DNA from: Guillardia theta CCMP2712
Taxonomy: Eukaryota; Protista; Cryptophyta
DNA length: 64,000 nucleotides
Assembly: GCF_000315625.1 (NCBI RefSeq)
Contig: NW_005434673.1
Span: forward strand, 210,270 to 274,269
Direction of reading: 5' to 3'
The first letter of the stretch is position 1. Every line of letters starts with the position of its first letter. Below, one piece after another: positions 25,977-54,650 of this stretch. The notes below the pieces were generated by a model. It did no database searches and was not told the DNA's origin. It saw nothing but the letters and a program-made list of their open reading frames with translations. Position numbers and translations under genes: made by a program.

Positions 25977-26318
25977 ACTGGTAAAGACGCTTGATTTGCA
26001 TCTGTGACAACTATCGAGTTACAATAGAATAGAACGAACATACACACAATGGACCAGAAAGTTAGAGAGGTTTGTATGGGGTCAGGGACGATGAGTGTGA
26101 TCATGGGCATGCATATTCCAATAACCATTTGCTTCTCGTTCCCATTCCAGACCCGGGAGAACAGCGAGTGAGGAAAGGAAGCGTGTAAAGTCTATCGGTC
26201 ATCACCATCACCATCACTTCCTTCCCTGCTCCTGCCCCTGCTCACTATCGCACATACTCATTCTCCACCTCTCTTTCTCGTCCTTCTCCTTCAACTTGCC
26301 CTTCTCCTGCACGGTCTT

Positions 26319-26518
26319 TCCTCTTCCTCCTCTTCCTCCTCTTCCTCCTCTTCCTCCTCTTCCTCCTCTTCCTCCTCTTCCTCCTCTTCCTCCTCTTCCT
26401 CCTCTTCCTCCTCTTCCTCCTCTTCCTCCTCTTCCTCCTCTTCCTCCTCTTCCTCCTCTTCCTCCTCTTCCTCCTCTTCCTCCTCTTCCTCCTCTTCCTC
26501 CTCTTCCTCCTCTTCCTC
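26319..26518. repeat. (CCTCTTCCT)n nonamer polypyrimidine repeat
   Basis: Direct reading. Confidence 0.97.
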
Positions 26519-26819
26519 CCCTCCCTCGTCCCCCCTCAACTCTCTACTCATTCTGATACGCTCGGACCCCTGCGATTAGGCTGCATGTGGACAAGGGGAT
26601 TGACAGGACCACCGGTAGTTTCGACAACCCATAAGGGGGTATTCCAAAAGTTTGTGTTTTCTCCCTCTGGAGACTTTTTGAGAAAGTTTGGGCGGCTCAA
26701 TCTTCCGAAGTTCCGCCGGGCGGCCCGGCAGGACTCGGGCCCGATGATCGGAATTGAGTAGAGAAAGTACTACAAGTCTATAGAAACAATATCTATTGGC
26801 CGCTGATGATATTTATCAC

Positions 26820-29666
26820 TTAGTAACCGGGCACAAGGGAAGGGACTTCAAAGTCTGCATCGGGCTGGGACTCTATGTCTGAAGTACTTATCGTCGAATC
26901 ATCATCGTCCTCACCGCTGCTGCCTGTCTCAAATTCATACTCTCTGTAGGAGACCTCTGATATCTCCTCCGACTGTGCTGCGGCGTCGTAGTGCAACTCC
27001 ATCCCCGTCGGCGACCATCTCTTGGCCAGCTCTCGGGCTGCTCACAAGGTCAGCAACTGGAAGTTCTCAGCTCACTTGACTCTCGACCGAAGGCTCTGAT
27101 CTCAGGGCAGATTCCGCCGACCGTCTGCTCTACTAAGGCCAATATGACCTTCTGGTAGATGGCCTGCAGAGGTTCAGCACGGGGCCGGCGGCAGCAACTG
27201 AGTTTCAGCTCACCACCCGCTGATCCTGTTCCATGATGACAGTGTCCAAGTCCGATACGTTCAGATGCTTCTGCCCAGGACCGCAAGTCAACTCGCGATG
27301 TGCAGGGCGCGTGCTGGAACCTGGTTGCTGAGGATACTGGCAAGGTAGAGGTTCTCGGCGTGATATTTCTCCGGGTTCAGGTTCGGCTGCATCGTCGCAC
27401 GAACGAAAGGGATCTTGCAGTCGTTCGGCGGTTCAATCTCCCCCCTGGCCTGCACGCTCGAGATAAGACTAGGAAGAAGCTTTCTCCGGCACTCACAATC
27501 TTGCGGTACTTCTCCAAGAGGGTCTCCTCGGATTCAAAAGTACTCTGAAAGGACATTTCAACCGCAGGGCATCAGAGGGCAGGTTGCTTACAGTATCTTG
27601 TTTGAAGTAGTAGACTTTGCCCTGGAACGTTGCCTTCACATAGTCTTCCGCGATCATGATTGTATACAGGATCTCCTTGTGCTCATTCTTGGTTTGAAGT
27701 GCATCAATATCGCACTACTGCCACAATCAAAGAACTTCTCACATTCATCTTCTCGTAATGTCTGCTGCAGAATGGAGTGCCTGGTGGCGGGAGCTTGAGG
27801 TGGTATCGTTCCAGCAGTGCAGTTTCCTGTTGAATCGTTACGATCGAACGTGGACGGCAGCCGTTCACTGTCTCGTTGAACGTGAGGATATTAGGAACCC
27901 TCAGCTTCGATGCGTTAACTCGTATCTGCTTGCACTCAACGAAGGCGCCATGAGGTTAAACAACACCTTTGTGGTTGATGAGACATTGAAGTATTTCTGG
28001 AACAGCTCAACATATTCCTGATCTCTCCTCTCGTTGAGCTCACTCTGGGAAGTGTAACACTTCAAGTGCTGCAATCTCCAACTCAGACACCAAGAAGCCT
28101 CTCAAGAGGAATCAATGCGTGCCTGGTTCAAATACGAGCCTAGAGGGTGGATTGATCGTTTTGCCTCCCACCTGTATTCCAATTACTTTTCATACTTCTA
28201 ATCACATCAGCCTCTCATACCTTTCACGGATTTGAGATCGTATATCCTTGATCAGACGTGCAGACTTGCGATCTGGCACCTCTTGAACTTGAGTCCAAGA
28301 GAAGCCATTGGTGGGAATTTTGCAAGCGCTGCAAATTTGCCTGTACCTGGACGAAGGTATCACCAAGAGGACTTCAAAACACCTCCTCATGCACCAGAGA
28401 GCCTCATGGTTGGCAAAAATGTCTGCCTCGACGAACATCGGCCTCGAGAAGCAGTGCTTGCATGTTCGAACCTTGTGCCTAATCTGCACACACCTCACAA
28501 TCCAGGCACCAACGCAAAACAACTGCTTCCACCTCCTTCCACTTGCCAAGGTCGTAACCTCTCTCGACGCCCTCTCTCAGGTATGCAGCAGCCGTCATTC
28601 GATGATCAAGTTCGTATGAGCAGTGGAGAGGATTGCCGTAGGAATTTGTGCCATCGTCATGAACCACAGGTCCTGGACAGTAGGGGCAAAAATCCATGGT
28701 TCTTTTTGAGATGTAGATCATTTGCTTGTCCACGTGATTCAGACTCTTCATTGATGAACCATATCGTTTCCATACTCTTCTGGTGGTCTTCGAGGTGTTG
28801 TCTTCATTCAACCTTAGTAGAATACAGTTGTTTTGGGGTTTTTCCCTAACCCGGATCAAGTTCAAATTTGTGATTTTTTTTGGCTTGTCTGGCTTGATGC
28901 GCCAGCCCAAGTCTGCATCAGGCATCTGGTCAATCGCTTTGGATTGCATCTTGAGCTGTCGAACAGTGGAGGTGCTCAGGGTAGCCTCGGATTTCTTCTC
29001 CATCAGCACCAACTTTTCAGGCTTCACTGTCTCGATCTCAGTTTGGGAATACTGAGACGTCAAGACTTCATTCTCGTGATAGCTCCTGTCCTCTTGCATT
29101 GTTATGGGCTCATGCATTTCAACAGATTGTTGGTGAAACCCATTCGCCTTGGTGTCTTGGGTACTTGCTGACAACATGTCGGCAGCAATGGAGTACACCC
29201 TCGCAACAGGGTCCCTGCCGTTGTCAACTTCATGCTGAAAGAAGACAGGCGAATCTTCAAAATTCAACGTAGGGAATCTCGATCCCGGTGATGCCCTATG
29301 ATTCACAAGAGCCGACATGTCATAGGCTAAGGCGGCAATCTTTGCCGTGGAGTATACACCAATGGTCTTTCTCAAGGACTTTGCTGAATAACCATCTTTT
29401 GATTTTGATACACCCCTGTACTTGACATTTTGATGTTCCTCTCCATGATGATCCGCGAATTTCCATCTTGTCAATGCTGCTTTCTTCGGTGTCTGGGCTA
29501 TGCCATCGTCTTGTGCGAGCGGCCTCTTGCCTGCTCCTCCCCGACATCTGCAAACACTGACGTACTGAGCTGACAATGGCTCAACGGTTCTCAATCCTGA
29601 AGTGGCAAGGAACAGATAGAGAAGCAGACCTATACGGTAAAGTTGTAGCAACAAACGTGTCGCCAT
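26820..29666 (-). CDS. Signal-peptide protein with AP2-like domain and Cys/His zinc-finger-like region, multi-exon
   Basis: Hydrophobic N-terminus; YRGVS...IGVYSTAKIAALAYD (AP2-like); CPYC...HC, CKHC and CSAC motifs; acidic tail ending at 26820. Linking all downstream exons into one gene is inferred. Confidence 0.65.
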
Positions 29667-31202
29667 GTATCATTCCTACTCACAACCATCCCACTGATTG
29701 GCAATGATGGACCATGATTGCTCTACAATGACAACCTGGGACATGTTGGACGTTCTACTTCCACACGTGATTGAGAGGAAAGCTCGATCTTTCACAGGGG
29801 AGTTTCTGCCCCGTCAATTCCTCAGACGCTACTTCCCCTCTCCTCGCTCCCTCCTCGTTCTTCTCTTCCTCCAGCTCCGGCGGCCGCATCTCGTCTCATC
29901 GCTCAAGTGCATGGCCCTCATCACCCGGACTCGGGCTCGGAACTTCCCCCGGCGAGCACTGAAGTGCTGACTGAAGTGACCGGCACGCAGACCGGCACGA
30001 TCCCAGTAGGGCAAGAGCGGGGATGAGGGTGAGCGAGGAGCGGAGGTTGAGGTGTCCTCTGCGCGTGAGCATGGAGGGGCTTCACGTTGTGTATGTCGGC
30101 AATGTCAGCAGCGCGACGTCGGTGAGAGGAGGAGGAGGAGGAGGAGGAGGATCACGAGGATGAGGAGGAGGAGTAGGAGAGGAGATGGAGAGGTCGAACT
30201 TGACAGGGATCAGATGAAGATACGTGGGAACGGCAGATGAAGCGTGGGAGGTGGTACAACGTGCAGGATTGGAGGGAGGATCTGGGTAACGAGGAGCAAG
30301 ATGATTGGGAGTATAATGAAGGGGTTACGTCTTGATGAACACAAGCAAAGGAGCTCTGACTTGTTCCATACTCTGAATTTTCAGAGGCATGATACTGATT
30401 TCATCTTGTTCAGCCCAAGGCAATCGAAGAATTGTTCACAAAATTTGATTCCTTCGTCAGCTGTGAGATGAAGAGCGCAGGATATGGATTTGTGGTCTGT
30501 GTAACTTCAGGAATGGTTGATGCATTTTGACACGTTCGAGCAGAAGTTTGAGAAATCGTCTGATGCCGAAGATGCCATATCGCAGTACGATGGGTGAGCG
30601 ATTCATGTGATATATACATGTCAGCGAACATTGTTTGGATGGTCTCCTGTATGAGCATCGTAGTCGGTGATGAAACCGCCAGTAGGTAGTGACGTGTTCA
30701 ACCATCGTATCGTGTTGATGTGGGTGGCATGCAAGAGGACTTGTTTGCCAAGGGCATAAGGACTCATTTCTGGAGTTGTGGGCTGTATGAAAGACACGGT
30801 GTGTTGACGCTGTCATCCATGAATGGAGGGAAGGATCGCTCACGGGTTGAAGGAAGGCTTTTTGCTCTGTGAGGAAAGAGAGTAGTGTGCATGCGAGGAT
30901 AGGACAGAGCTTTTGAAATGAGTGCTTGTTTGGGGTCTCTTTGGACACGGAATGTGGATTTGGCAACTTGAGGCATGACAAAAAACCAACATCTCTTGGA
31001 TGAAGGGGTCTGCTTCTGAAAGGGGTCAAGTGAAACATGGAGGTTATGGACTTGATAAGGCGGGGACACAATATGCACTTGGTTGTCATAGAAGTGTTGC
31101 AGCTTTTGTTGGATACAGAATTTATCATCATGCCGCCCATCTAGAGTCACTTTCTTACTTCTCCTAGGTATGAGCTTGAGGGCAATAAGCTCAGGGTCCA
31201 AC

Positions 31203-53226: not shown

Positions 53227-54650
53227 ATGACGATGATGAAGATGAAGATGAAGATGAAGATGATGATGAAGATGAAGAAGAAGAAGAAGAAGAAGATGAT
53301 GATGATGATGAAGAAGATGGTAATGGTGGTGGCGGTGATGGTGGTGGTCGAAGTAATGATGATAGTGATGATTATGATGATTATGATGATTATGATGATG
53401 AGTAGNNNNNNNNNNNNNNNNNNNNNNNNNNNNNNNNNNNNNNNNNNNNNNNNNNNNNNNNNNNNNNNNNNNNNNNNNNNNNNNNNNNNNNNNNNNNNNN
53501 NNNNNGAAAGGGCTCCTCGCTGAGCTCCTTGCTCTTAACCTCCTTCCGATATCCCCCAGGCCCGCGTCTTGAGCTCCTCCGGATGAACCTTCGGGGCGGT
53601 TGCCGGCTTCTTCATCACCCCGAGGAAAAGAGGGCCGTTGGAGCAGTCGATGTGGATGATCCACCGGCTGGTGCCCTGCTGCTTCGGTTGTGACCTGAAG
53701 CGGACAAGCAGCCATGAGCAGCAAGCAGGGGGGGGGAGAGGGAGGACCAGGTGATGTACGCGTAGTCCACGGGCTCGTAGTAGATGGGAGGAGGGTCTTG
53801 GTAGTCACTCTGGTCAGGTGACATCCTCTTCCAACCTTTTGGAGGCTTCCAGTGTGAGTTGCTCATGTTGATGTAGATGGCCTTGTCGTTGATCTGAACC
53901 CCATGGAGAACCGAGAGGACAACGTGATCTGTGATCATATCTCCTGAGAGATCGCACGTCAGGGTAGCAAGGGAGAGCTTCTCTCCTCACACTGACCCGT
54001 CTGAAGCCTGAAACGAGCCTTCTTACCGTCCTCGTCGACCTCTATGTCCCTGCTCCATTCACTCACGTTCCACGTCTCGTTGTACCGCTCGTCGAAGGTT
54101 TGCATCCAGTTGAACGGCTCATCGTCAAAGGGGACCATCCTGTCCTCATTGAACAGAGTCACGTTGGGGTCCGAGGCCATAAGATATCTGTCTGACTTCC
54201 ACCCGTACTGGGTGTCCTTGGTGGCATGCTTGCCGGGGAAATCACTGAAGAGGATGATCTATGGGAGGTCGTGGATGTCAGAAAGATCAAAGGGAGACGA
54301 AACACTCTCACGTTCCCGGAGATCTCTCGGAAGAGCTCAGCAGTATTAGGGAGAGGATGCCGTTTCTTCCTTGCCGGGGTCTTTCGCTTCTCCTTCCCTG
54401 CATCTTCGGCACTTCCCTGCTCTGTTTCTCTCTCAATCATGGCGTTGTTGTCGATGATCGACTCGATCTCATCGTCCAGATCTGATGACCCTCCTCGCAA
54501 GCTCAGCCGCGAAACATCCATGGACTTGACTTTCAGTCTAGAACTCCCACACCTCGTCCGCAGCTTGCAGGACGTGGAGCTTGGATGTTCCTGGCTGGCG
54601 TAGGGAATGATGATAGTGAGGATGATCGTCACCGTGATTGGCCTCCTCAT
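52555..54650 (-). CDS. Signal-peptide protein with LSLRGG motif and possible SPRY-like domain; spans an N gap
   Basis: Hydrophobic N-terminus; RLSLRGG; RWIIHIDCSNGPLFLGV...FAFFGV...VPFYCTKTPGDSIRLL resembles SPRY strands. Confidence 0.6.
53160..53505. repeat. Compound (TGC)(TGA)(GAA)(GGT) microsatellite abutting a 100-N gap (53406-53505)
   Basis: Direct reading. Confidence 0.95.

What the first reader, a model, noticed from the sequence alone, without database searches (positions are those of the whole stretch)
26820..29666. AP2/zinc-finger DNA-binding protein carrying an ER signal peptide: candidate host-encoded nucleomorph regulator
Seen: hydrophobic leader (LLLQLYRIGLLLYLFLATSG), no Phe at the predicted +1, an RCRGG motif, basic NLS-like stretches, an AP2-like domain and several CxxC motifs. 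Established: in cryptophytes a signal peptide plus a non-Phe transit peptide targets the periplastid compartment, which houses the nucleomorph. Inference: a nuclear-type factor with a signal peptide is best explained by import into the endosymbiont nucleus, i.e. host transcriptional control of the nucleomorph.
Basis: partly seen in the sequence, partly recalled or inferred. Interest (0 to 1): 0.7.

Follow-up and report, generated by a model that had tools for sequence, protein, structure and literature searches.

The report
Leader-bearing AP2 protein of Guillardia
A nuclear gene of the alga Guillardia theta encodes an AP2-type DNA-binding protein that starts with the same kind of import leader as the histone known to enter the alga's relict second nucleus, so it is a good but unproven candidate for host control of that nucleus.

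Summary
Spliced RNA contigs from three studies define a minus-strand gene with its ATG at 29666 and its stop ending at 26820. It has 13 exons, 12 introns of 41-55 nt, and encodes 754 aa. This is GUITHDRAFT_98971 of Guillardia theta CCMP2712; the deposited 711-aa model has a different N-terminus.

Residues 81-136 are a divergent AP2/ERF domain. Pfam misses it, but a family profile hits only AP2/ERF structures (E 4e-9). The AlphaFold model (pLDDT 85) matches AtERF1, WRI1 and TEM1 at Z about 7.

The N-terminus looks like a signal peptide, followed 16 residues later by RCRGG, a mimic of the ubiquitin tail. Relatives from Hanusia, Baffinella and several unnamed contigs keep signal peptide, R-x-R/K-GG and AP2.

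Of 30 sampled LRLRGG-type sites in the genome, 18 lie behind a signal-peptide-like start, against 3% of control positions. These include the leader-bearing histone H2A, which Onuma et al. 2017 localised to the nucleomorph, and an eEF1A-like protein. Import into the periplastid compartment is therefore well supported by analogy. DNA binding in the nucleomorph and regulation are inferred.

The PHD-like reading is not supported, and the C-terminal half has no relatives. Earlier notes of this scan reported the same leader class on other DNA of this genome.

The parts
26820..29666 (-). Coding region of the gene (GUITHDRAFT_98971): 13 exons, 754 codons plus stop. Exons in + coordinates: 28533-29666, 28395-28483, 28221-28346, 28123-28171, 27967-28068, 27869-27925, 27743-27826, 27592-27687, 27497-27544, 27321-27449, 27214-27270, 27088-27163, 26820-27037.
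   Evidence: Spliced contigs of X1, X2 and X6; canonical intron ends; one open frame; identity with EKX55191.1 over most of its length.
29667..29923 (-). 5' untranslated region with 8 upstream ATGs. It includes a 22-codon upstream ORF (29676-29744) and an ORF starting at 29673 that overlaps the main start.
   Evidence: Contigs run 12-23 nt beyond 29900; list of ATGs and alignment to L002.
29630..29683 (-). Candidate 54-nt intron (GTGAGT..TATAG) used by the deposited 711-aa model to fuse the upstream ORF to LLLYLFLATSG. It is not spliced in the RNA contigs.
   Evidence: P0024 sequence compared with the continuous contigs over 28533-29900; conserved in L002.
29595..29666 (-). Signal-peptide-like leader, residues 1-24.
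   Evidence: Sequence; conserved pattern in Hanusia and in P0032, P0022, P0023, P0003 and P0006; passes the same rule-based test as 18 of 30 LRLRGG leaders.
29535..29594 (-). Transit-peptide-like spacer, residues 25-44 (3 basic and 1 acidic residue; 5 basic and 1 acidic over residues 25-48), ending in RCRGG (29535-29549), a mimic of the ubiquitin C-terminus RLRGG.
   Evidence: The R and GG columns are invariant in the family alignment A2. Genome-wide leader class.
29259..29426 (-). Divergent AP2/ERF domain, residues 81-136: three strands then a helix, with YRGV, LAYD and LNF.
   Evidence: The profile of the family hits only AP2/ERF chains in the PDB (7wq5 at 4.3e-9, 2gcc at 3.2e-7, 1gcc, 5wx9, 7et4). 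Model pLDDT is 84.7. Foldseek's top 7 are all AP2. VIA-align gives Z 6.9-7.5 against 4.0 for the next fold.
29157..29252 (-). Two-helix extension of the AP2 domain with the conserved E..GRDP motif, residues 139-170. It is specific to this cryptophyte family.
   Evidence: Alignments A2 and A3; helices H70-79 and H84-100 of the model.
28533..28907 (-). Best-conserved block, residues 254-378, including CPYC (28677-28688) and His/Cys residues. Fold unknown.
   Evidence: 67% identity to Hanusia over this block; dN/dS 0.08; no family hit; model pLDDT 34.
28322..28462 (-). CKHC (28451-28462, exon 2) and CSAC (28322-28333, exon 3): C-x2-C, 23 residues, C-x2-C across intron 2. Possibly a zinc ribbon; unassigned.
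   Evidence: Sequence; CSAC unchanged and CKHC read as CKYC in L002, so all four cysteines are kept; no family hit.
26823..26939 (-). Acidic, Ser/Asp/Glu-rich C-terminal tail, residues 716-754. It resembles an acidic activation region (inference).
   Evidence: Sequence.

Best explanation
This is a single-copy, expressed nuclear gene of Guillardia theta. It encodes a 754-aa protein built from four parts:
1. A cleavable signal peptide.
2. A short transit-peptide-like spacer that ends in the ubiquitin-tail mimic RCRGG.
3. A divergent AP2/ERF DNA-binding domain with a family-specific two-helix extension.
4. A long lineage-specific C-terminal part with three CxxC pairs and an acidic tail.

Proposed mechanism:
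- The signal peptide takes the nascent chain into the ER lumen, which in cryptophytes is continuous with the outermost plastid membrane.
- The non-aromatic spacer sends it across the next membrane into the periplastid compartment.
- The leader is removed at or just after GG. The enzyme is unknown.
- The mature protein, starting near residue 45, enters the nucleomorph and binds DNA through the AP2 domain.

Shown here: the gene structure, its expression, the AP2 fold, conservation of the leader, and membership of a recurrent leader class that includes the H2A gene with an N-terminal extension.

Inferred: the import route, the cut after GG, entry into the nucleomorph, DNA binding and any regulatory effect.
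For: Gene and start:
- Spliced contigs from three studies give an open 754-codon frame.
- The Hanusia phi protein, listed in the EukProt collection, starts at the same Met with the same n/h/c pattern.
- The next in-frame Met (M117) lies inside the AP2 domain.

AP2:
- The family profile finds bona fide PF00847 proteins and only AP2/ERF structures in the PDB.
- The confident model is strand-strand-strand-helix.
- It matches AtERF1 at Z 7.3 with rmsd 2.5 A over 55 residues and 34% identity.

Leader class:
- The pattern L-[RS]-[LF]-R-G-G occurs 353 times in the genome, against 255 for the reversed control.
- Of the first 30 sites, 18 have a Met plus an uncharged hydrophobic core 15-120 aa upstream. 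Only 3.1% of control positions do (p about 4e-20).
- These sites include a locus whose leader exon can be joined in frame to the histone fold of the only G. theta H2A gene found with an N-terminal extension. That protein was localised to the nucleomorph by immunofluorescence (PMC5443833).
- An eEF1A-like GTPase start and a Trm112-like start follow directly after GG.
- By-eye signal-peptide cuts in 14 of these leaders give no aromatic +1 residue. Two light-harvesting proteins with intact leaders have ..S/A|F and no RGG.

Distribution: all named relatives are cryptophytes (Guillardia, Hanusia, Baffinella), and all carry signal peptide, RxR/KGG and AP2.

Selection: dN/dS is 0.23 against a 94%-identical relative, with all 11 introns that its contig covers kept.
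Against: - No localisation data exist for this protein.
- No signal-peptide or ASAFind predictor could be run, so the cleavage site is my estimate. If the cut follows G24, the +1 residue is Leu, which in diatoms is a plastid-type residue. The H2A leader also appears to have Leu at +1.
- The motif here is RCRGG, not LRLRGG.
- By my reading of the profile alignment, against AtERF1 contact residues recalled from Allen et al. 1998, only R147 and R170 equivalents of the AtERF1 DNA contacts are kept. R150, R152, W154, E160, R162 and W172 are replaced, so DNA binding is not assured.
- NLS-like stretches are weak in this protein.
- The main ATG is the ninth ATG of the mRNA and has a poor -3 base.
- Contigs cannot exclude a minor isoform that splices 29630-29683 and alters the leader.
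- That the nucleomorph is the target, rather than the periplastid compartment in general, is unproven.
Confidence: 0.55

Rival explanations
1. The protein is imported into the periplastid compartment but is not a transcription regulator. The AP2 fold would serve as a nucleic-acid-binding module of a repair, recombination, nuclease or RNA-handling protein, with the Cys/His-rich middle part as the working domain.
For: AP2 domains occur fused to HNH endonucleases; one of the profile hits, P0008, is HNH_3 plus AP2, and see PMC12220804. The block of residues 254-378 is the most constrained part (dN/dS 0.08) and holds CPYC...H..HC..ELDH, followed by CKHC. Most AtERF1 base-contact residues are lost (alignment).
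Against: There is no HNH or other enzyme family hit at E up to 1 and no PDB hit. The model of this part is unusable. The acidic tail fits an activator.
Confidence: 0.15
2. The hydrophobic N-terminus holds the protein in the ER or nuclear-envelope membrane, or takes it into the secretory path. A cut at RCRGG by a cytosolic ubiquitin-type protease then releases an AP2 factor that acts in the host nucleus, as a membrane-tethered transcription factor.
For: The N-terminal hydrophobic segment sits directly before a protease-like motif and basic residues. The deposited annotation treats the gene as an ordinary nuclear gene.
Against: The uncharged core is only about 10 residues in this protein and 10-15 in all relatives, which is the length of a signal peptide and not of a membrane anchor. 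The same leader build is carried by the nucleomorph H2A and an eEF1A-like protein. A cleaved signal peptide would place the protein in the lumen, away from cytosolic proteases.
Confidence: 0.1
3. The leader is a plastid-stroma leader, with Leu at +1 acting like an aromatic residue, and the protein binds the plastid chromosome.
For: L25 is invariant between Guillardia and Hanusia. [quoted passage not shown]
Against: The two G. theta light-harvesting leaders seen intact have Phe at +1 and no RGG. The leader of the nucleomorph H2A reads ..TSA|LRPV.., much like ..TSG|LRTV.. here. The spacer before GG is only 20 residues.
Confidence: 0.08
4. The functional product lacks an intact signal peptide. 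Either the 54-nt stretch 29630-29683 is spliced, as in the deposited model, or translation is dominated by upstream ORFs. The AP2 protein would then be a host-nuclear factor, or dual-targeted.
For: The candidate intron has canonical ends and a typical size. The upstream ORF shows 3 synonymous and 1 non-synonymous change against L002. There are eight upstream ATGs.
Against: All four contigs that cover the region, from three studies, leave it unspliced while removing the other 12 introns. The Hanusia protein listed in EukProt starts at the equivalent of ATG 29666. The spliced form would still keep LLLYLFLATSG and RCRGG.
Confidence: 0.07

Closest known systems
Plant AP2/ERF DNA-binding domains (AtERF1 1gcc/2gcc, WRI1 7wq5, TEM1 7et4, ERF096 5wx9)
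   Same: Three-stranded sheet packed on a helix. YRGV at strand 1 and (A)AxAYD in the helix. Profile E 4e-9 to 6e-4. Z 6.9-7.5, and 34% identity to AtERF1 over 55 residues.
   Different: Below Pfam's threshold. Seven-residue deletion between strands 2 and 3. Most GCC-box contact residues replaced. Two extra helices with GRDP. An ER-type leader in front. A 590-residue unrelated C-terminal part.
Nucleus-encoded, nucleomorph-localised histone H2A of G. theta (Onuma et al. 2017, PMC5443833)
   Same: Signal peptide, then a spacer of 20-26 residues without an aromatic +1 residue, then R-x-R-G-G, then a chromatin- or DNA-binding protein.
   Different: The H2A has the exact ubiquitin tail LRLRGG, whereas the AP2 protein has RCRGG. 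The H2A has been localised by antibody, the AP2 protein has not. The link between my locus L007 and the published protein rests on it being the only H2A gene with an extension, not on an accession match.
Putative nucleomorph-targeted transcription factors predicted from the G. theta genome (Curtis et al. 2012, as cited in PMC6009652 and PMC4494062)
   Same: Nuclear gene, bipartite leader, transcription-type domain. It belongs to the estimated 2,400 nucleus-encoded periplastid proteins.
   Different: I could not read that paper or its lists, so I do not know whether this gene is among them. The deposited model has another N-terminus, which may have hidden the signal peptide.
AP2 proteins of other protists (ApiAP2 of apicomplexans, diatom AP2) and HNH-AP2 homing endonucleases
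   Same: AP2 fold outside plants. Multi-AP2 and HNH_3-AP2 proteins are among the profile hits.
   Different: Those proteins have no signal peptide and act in the cell's own nucleus or as mobile endonucleases. This gene is single-copy, has 12 spliceosomal introns, is under purifying selection, and has one AP2 domain and no HNH match.
Membrane-tethered transcription factors released by proteolysis (ATF6/bZIP28, plant NTL, yeast Spt23/Mga2)
   Same: A hydrophobic segment plus a proteolytic site next to a DNA-binding domain.
   Different: Their anchors are full transmembrane helices, usually C-terminal to the DNA-binding domain. Here the segment is N-terminal and of signal-peptide length.

Membership tests
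AP2/ERF domain (PF00847) | Score over Pfam's gathering threshold | tested here: not met
   No hit at E up to 1 for the 395-aa ORF, up to 10 for the 81-aa segment alone, or for P0024. Also not found by PF00847 in the genome scan.
AP2/ERF domain (PF00847) | Homology to proven AP2/ERF domains by profile search | tested here: met
   A profile of 10 family members hits five PDB sequences, all AP2/ERF, at E 4.3e-9 to 6.3e-4. The whole-library profile search finds PF00847 proteins at 1e-7 and weaker.
AP2/ERF domain (PF00847) | Three-stranded antiparallel sheet followed by an amphipathic helix | tested here: met
   Strands E17-20, E23-28 and E31-36, helix H39-56, pLDDT about 90. Z 7.3 and rmsd 2.5 A over 55 residues to 1gcc_A, with unrelated folds at Z 4.0 or below.
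AP2/ERF domain (PF00847) | Conserved YRG and RAYD elements | tested here: met
   YRGV at 83-86 and LAYD at 113-116. R, G, V, A, Y and D are invariant in A3.
AP2/ERF domain (PF00847) | Sequence-specific DNA binding | not testable with these tools
   The Arg/Trp contacts of AtERF1 are mostly replaced by Ser, Lys, Asp, Leu or Thr (my reading of the alignment; contact list recalled from memory).
Cryptophyte periplastid-type bipartite leader | N-terminal cleavable signal peptide | tested here: inconclusive
   The n/h/c pattern is present and conserved and passes my rule-based test. No trained predictor was available.
Cryptophyte periplastid-type bipartite leader | No aromatic residue at +1 of the transit-peptide-like part | tested here: met
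   +1 is Leu or Gly depending on the cut. The rule is quoted in PMC5443833. Caveat: Leu is plastid-type in diatoms.
Cryptophyte periplastid-type bipartite leader | Localisation in the periplastid compartment or nucleomorph | not testable with these tools
   Needs GFP fusion or antibody.
Signal peptide + ubiquitin-tail (LRLRGG) leader class of G. theta | R-x-R/K-G-G 15-120 residues behind a signal-peptide-like start, at the border to the mature protein | tested here: met
   RCRGG at 40-44. The class itself holds for 18 of 30 sampled sites against 3.1% of controls. This protein has a variant, Cys instead of Leu.
Signal peptide + ubiquitin-tail (LRLRGG) leader class of G. theta | Motif kept in orthologues while the rest of the leader drifts | tested here: met
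   The R and GG columns are invariant in 7 sequences: RCRGGG in Hanusia, RLRGGG in Baffinella and P0003, RLKGGG in P0004-6.
PHD finger | C4HC3 ligand spacing and a family match | tested here: not met
   No Pfam hit. The Cys/His order is CxxC-x18-HC-x5-H ... CxxC-x23-CxxC, which does not fit C4HC3. The model is unusable.
HNH endonuclease | HNH/HNH_3 profile match with catalytic His and Asn | tested here: not met
   No HNH family at E up to 1 or 10. There is only a loose resemblance: CPYC..ELDH..CKHC.

The most novel reading that the evidence does not exclude
This would be the first sequence-specific, host-encoded regulator of nucleomorph transcription. It is conserved across cryptophytes, delivered by a leader that a ubiquitin-type protease cuts off after GG, and possibly switched between the nucleomorph and the host nucleus by optional splicing of the 54-nt stretch 29630-29683, which rewrites the signal peptide.
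Probability: 0.15. Interest if true: 0.8.

Novelty: new member of a known kind. Interest (0 to 1): 0.5.

Why it matters
Nucleomorph genes are transcribed almost uniformly, and the nucleomorph encodes few transcription proteins (PMC6009652, PMC5443833). How far the host steers them is an open question.

A single-copy AP2-type protein, seen among named species only in cryptophytes, carries the same leader build as the nucleomorph histone H2A. That gives a concrete, testable candidate: localise it, find its binding sites on the 551-kb nucleomorph genome (size from memory), and perturb it.

The case also corrects the deposited gene model. It adds a DNA-binding member to the leader class that ends in a ubiquitin-tail mimic. 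I did not find that class in the literature searched.

Tried and rejected
- Pfam on the 395-aa ORF, on ten open-frame pieces and on the deposited 711-aa protein; NCBIfam; phmmer against the PDB. No hit from any of them.
- The idea that the gene ends at 28479, suggested by the 395- and 397-aa database proteins P0001 and P0002, was rejected. These read through intron 1.
- PHD and HNH readings of the Cys/His-rich part: not supported (see membership tests).
- AlphaFold on residues 254-428 with three sequences: pLDDT 34, unusable.
- ESM Atlas look-alikes for that part: best score 0.77, below chance level.
- Word search for relatives of the C-terminal half: none.
- Paralogue search in the genome: only the gene itself.
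- RLRGG at about 59281 and about 41038 in the window: internal to other frames, not leaders.
- Raw reads of run X17 gave only 3 reads, so nothing can be said on 5' ends or minor isoforms.
- Curtis et al. 2012 could not be read.
- The taxonomic origin of the unnamed relatives (P0003-6, P0022/23, P0033/34) could not be settled. P0003's contig carries the same C-terminal module as the Baffinella protein.
- Exon 1 and the other pieces were searched by reference, and the stored model P0024 was used for the rest. The join was made only inside scripts, to check the frame and to count substitutions.
Full report
**What is there**

The window is a piece of the Guillardia theta CCMP2712 nuclear genome. 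The protein cluster of the ORF contains EKX55191.1/XP_005842171.1, 'hypothetical protein GUITHDRAFT_98971'. UniRef names it 'AP2/ERF domain-containing protein'.

A 395-aa ORF lies on the minus strand at 28479-29666. Contigs of three independent runs (X1, X2, X6) cover 26803/26828 to beyond 29900 and skip twelve stretches of 41-55 nt. On the minus strand these all have GT/GC..AG ends.

I joined the exons inside a script, only to test the frame. They give one open frame of 754 codons from ATG 29666 to the stop ending at 26820.

Two database proteins are shorter: 395 aa (P0001, a metagenome ORF call) and 397 aa (P0002, Hanusia phi). Both simply read on into intron 1.

The deposited 711-aa model (P0024) differs from the RNA-supported model in several places:
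- It starts at an upstream ATG.
- It removes 29630-29683 as an intron, which the contigs do not.
- It skips the end of exon 3, all of exons 4 and 6, and shifts one splice site.

**The AP2 domain**

Pfam does not see the domain. I built a profile from exon 1 and its two close relatives and searched it against 1.8 billion representatives. It found 20 proteins, almost all matching residues 75-160. Those beyond the closest five are mostly genuine PF00847 proteins, often with several AP2 repeats.

A 10-sequence profile of the domain hits five PDB sequences:
- WRI1 at 4.3e-9
- AtERF1 at 3-4e-7
- ERF096
- TEM1

All five are AP2/ERF.

AlphaFold on that alignment gives pLDDT 84.7, with three strands, a helix and two more helices. 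Foldseek's first seven matches are all AP2. VIA-align gives Z 7.5, 7.3 and 7.2 for WRI1, AtERF1 and TEM1. For AtERF1 the rmsd is 2.5 A over 55 residues at 34% identity. The next fold scores Z 4.0.

The fold is therefore settled. DNA binding is not. In my reading of the alignment, only the equivalents of R147 and R170 of AtERF1's base-contacting residues survive; that contact list is from memory.

**The leader**

Residues 1-24 have a basic n-region, a 10-residue uncharged core and T-S-G before the likely cut. Twenty residues later comes RCRGG.

The Hanusia protein keeps the same start, the same pattern and RCRGGG. More distant relatives have a signal-peptide-like start, then a spacer, then RLRGGG or RLKGGG, then basic clusters, an acidic linker, the AP2 domain and the GRDP helices. 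These relatives are:
- Baffinella frigidus P0032
- unnamed contigs P0003-P0006, P0022, P0023 and P0034 (P0033 starts within its spacer, so no start is visible)

R-x-R/K-G-G is the C-terminus of ubiquitin (RLRGG).

**Is that leader a class?**

Earlier notes of this scan on other DNA of the genome claimed that it is. I tested the claim.

The DNA pattern for L-[RS]-[LF]-R-G-G occurs 353 times in the genome, against 255 for the same pattern read backwards. Of the first 30 sites in genome order, 18 have an in-frame Met followed by an uncharged hydrophobic core 15-120 residues upstream. Only 3.1% of 18,407 control positions in the same loci do (binomial p about 4e-20).

After the GG come these proteins:
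- a protein that starts GKEKHH..GHVDSGKST, which matches GTP_EFTU and is eEF1A-like
- a Trm112-like start
- a methyltransferase and a RETICULATA-like protein
- at locus L025/L007, a leader exon that a 191-nt GTGAAT..TTCCAG intron would join in frame to a histone H2A fold

The genome scan with the H2A C-terminal family finds six loci: three canonical H2A genes without an extension, two H2A.Z-like genes without one, and this gene. That matches Onuma et al. 2017. They report exactly one G. theta H2A with a bipartite leader and show by immunofluorescence that it sits in the nucleomorph (PMC5443833).

Its leader reads ..SSTSA|LRPVD...LRLRGG. The AP2 leader reads ..LATSG|LRTVE...RCRGG.

As controls, two light-harvesting genes whose leader lies in the same exon have Ser/Ala followed by Phe at the cut and no RGG.

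**What follows**

The protein most likely takes the periplastid route. Because it carries a DNA-binding fold, the nucleomorph is the obvious destination within that compartment. That last step, the cut after GG and any regulatory role are inferences.

The C-terminal 590 residues add little:
- Residues 254-378 are the most constrained block (dN/dS 0.08, against 0.23 overall). They contain CPYC and several His.
- CKHC and CSAC follow in exons 2 and 3.
- No family, structure or look-alike was found, and the model failed.
- The last 39 residues are strongly acidic, as in many activators.

The 'PHD-like' label should be dropped.

**Rivals**

- A membrane-tethered host factor is unlikely, because the hydrophobic core has signal-peptide length in every relative.
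- A stromal destination cannot be excluded from Leu at +1 alone. However, the nucleomorph H2A seems to share that residue.
- An isoform without an intact leader is possible in principle. The 54-nt stretch 29630-29683 has canonical intron ends. The upstream ORF it would fuse shows three synonymous and one non-synonymous change against the 94%-identical relative L002. Still, every contig leaves it unspliced.
- The mRNA has eight upstream ATGs, so translation of the main ORF may be regulated.

**Novelty**

Predicted nucleomorph-targeted transcription factors are mentioned in the literature for G. theta (Curtis et al. 2012, cited in PMC6009652). The kind is therefore known.

I found no paper linking an AP2 protein to the cryptophyte nucleomorph. 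I also found none describing the RLRGG leader end. The library does not hold Curtis et al..

I rate this a new member of a known kind, of moderate interest. It is a well-defined candidate that makes host control of the nucleomorph testable.

**Limits**

- No signal-peptide predictor was available.
- There are no usable raw RNA reads (3 reads in X17).
Exon 1 and the other pieces were used by reference, and the stored protein P0024 was used for the rest.

Noticed in passing
window 29630-29744 (minus strand): A 22-codon upstream ORF (29676-29744) is conserved in the 94%-identical relative, with 3 synonymous and 1 non-synonymous change. A canonical 54-nt candidate intron (29630-29683) would fuse it to the leader, as in the deposited model. 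The RNA contigs do not splice it. This could be a regulatory uORF or a minor isoform with an altered signal peptide.
   Followed up: partly
window 28484-28532 (intron 1): The Hanusia phi protein P0002, listed in EukProt, and the metagenome ORF P0001 both end in read-through of intron 1. The read-through peptides are similar (..VE..V..W..C..). Intron retention would give a 395-aa protein with leader and AP2 but without the C-terminal half.
   Followed up: no
window 54159-54650 (minus strand): A second ORF in this window with a signal-peptide-like start and RLSLRGG 42 residues in, followed by an acidic stretch. No Pfam family.
   Followed up: partly
L007:430-1560 (G000:C4:101179-102309): Histone H2A gene whose first exon is a signal peptide plus LRLRGG leader. 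It is probably the nucleomorph H2A of Onuma et al. 2017. The exon join is inferred from sequence only.
   Followed up: partly
L023:1332-1640 (G000:C3, minus strand): An eEF1A-like GTPase starts (GKEKHH..GHVDSGKST) directly after the GG of a signal-peptide leader. Likewise a Trm112-like start (MKLFTHNLL) in L035. The leader replaces or abuts the native first residue, as in ubiquitin fusions.
   Followed up: partly
L039:1243-1960 and P0032 residues 235-302: The Baffinella-type relatives carry, after the AP2 domain, a module with ..LGLKS..W..W.. and ..SGF.SWEDFLG.. that the Guillardia and Hanusia proteins lack. I could not name it.
   Followed up: no
window 26291-26556: Long GAG/CTC-type triplet run that reads as poly-Glu on one strand and (PPL)n on the other, just downstream of the gene's 3' end. 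Runs of N (assembly gaps) lie near 43.8 kb and 53.2 kb.
   Followed up: no
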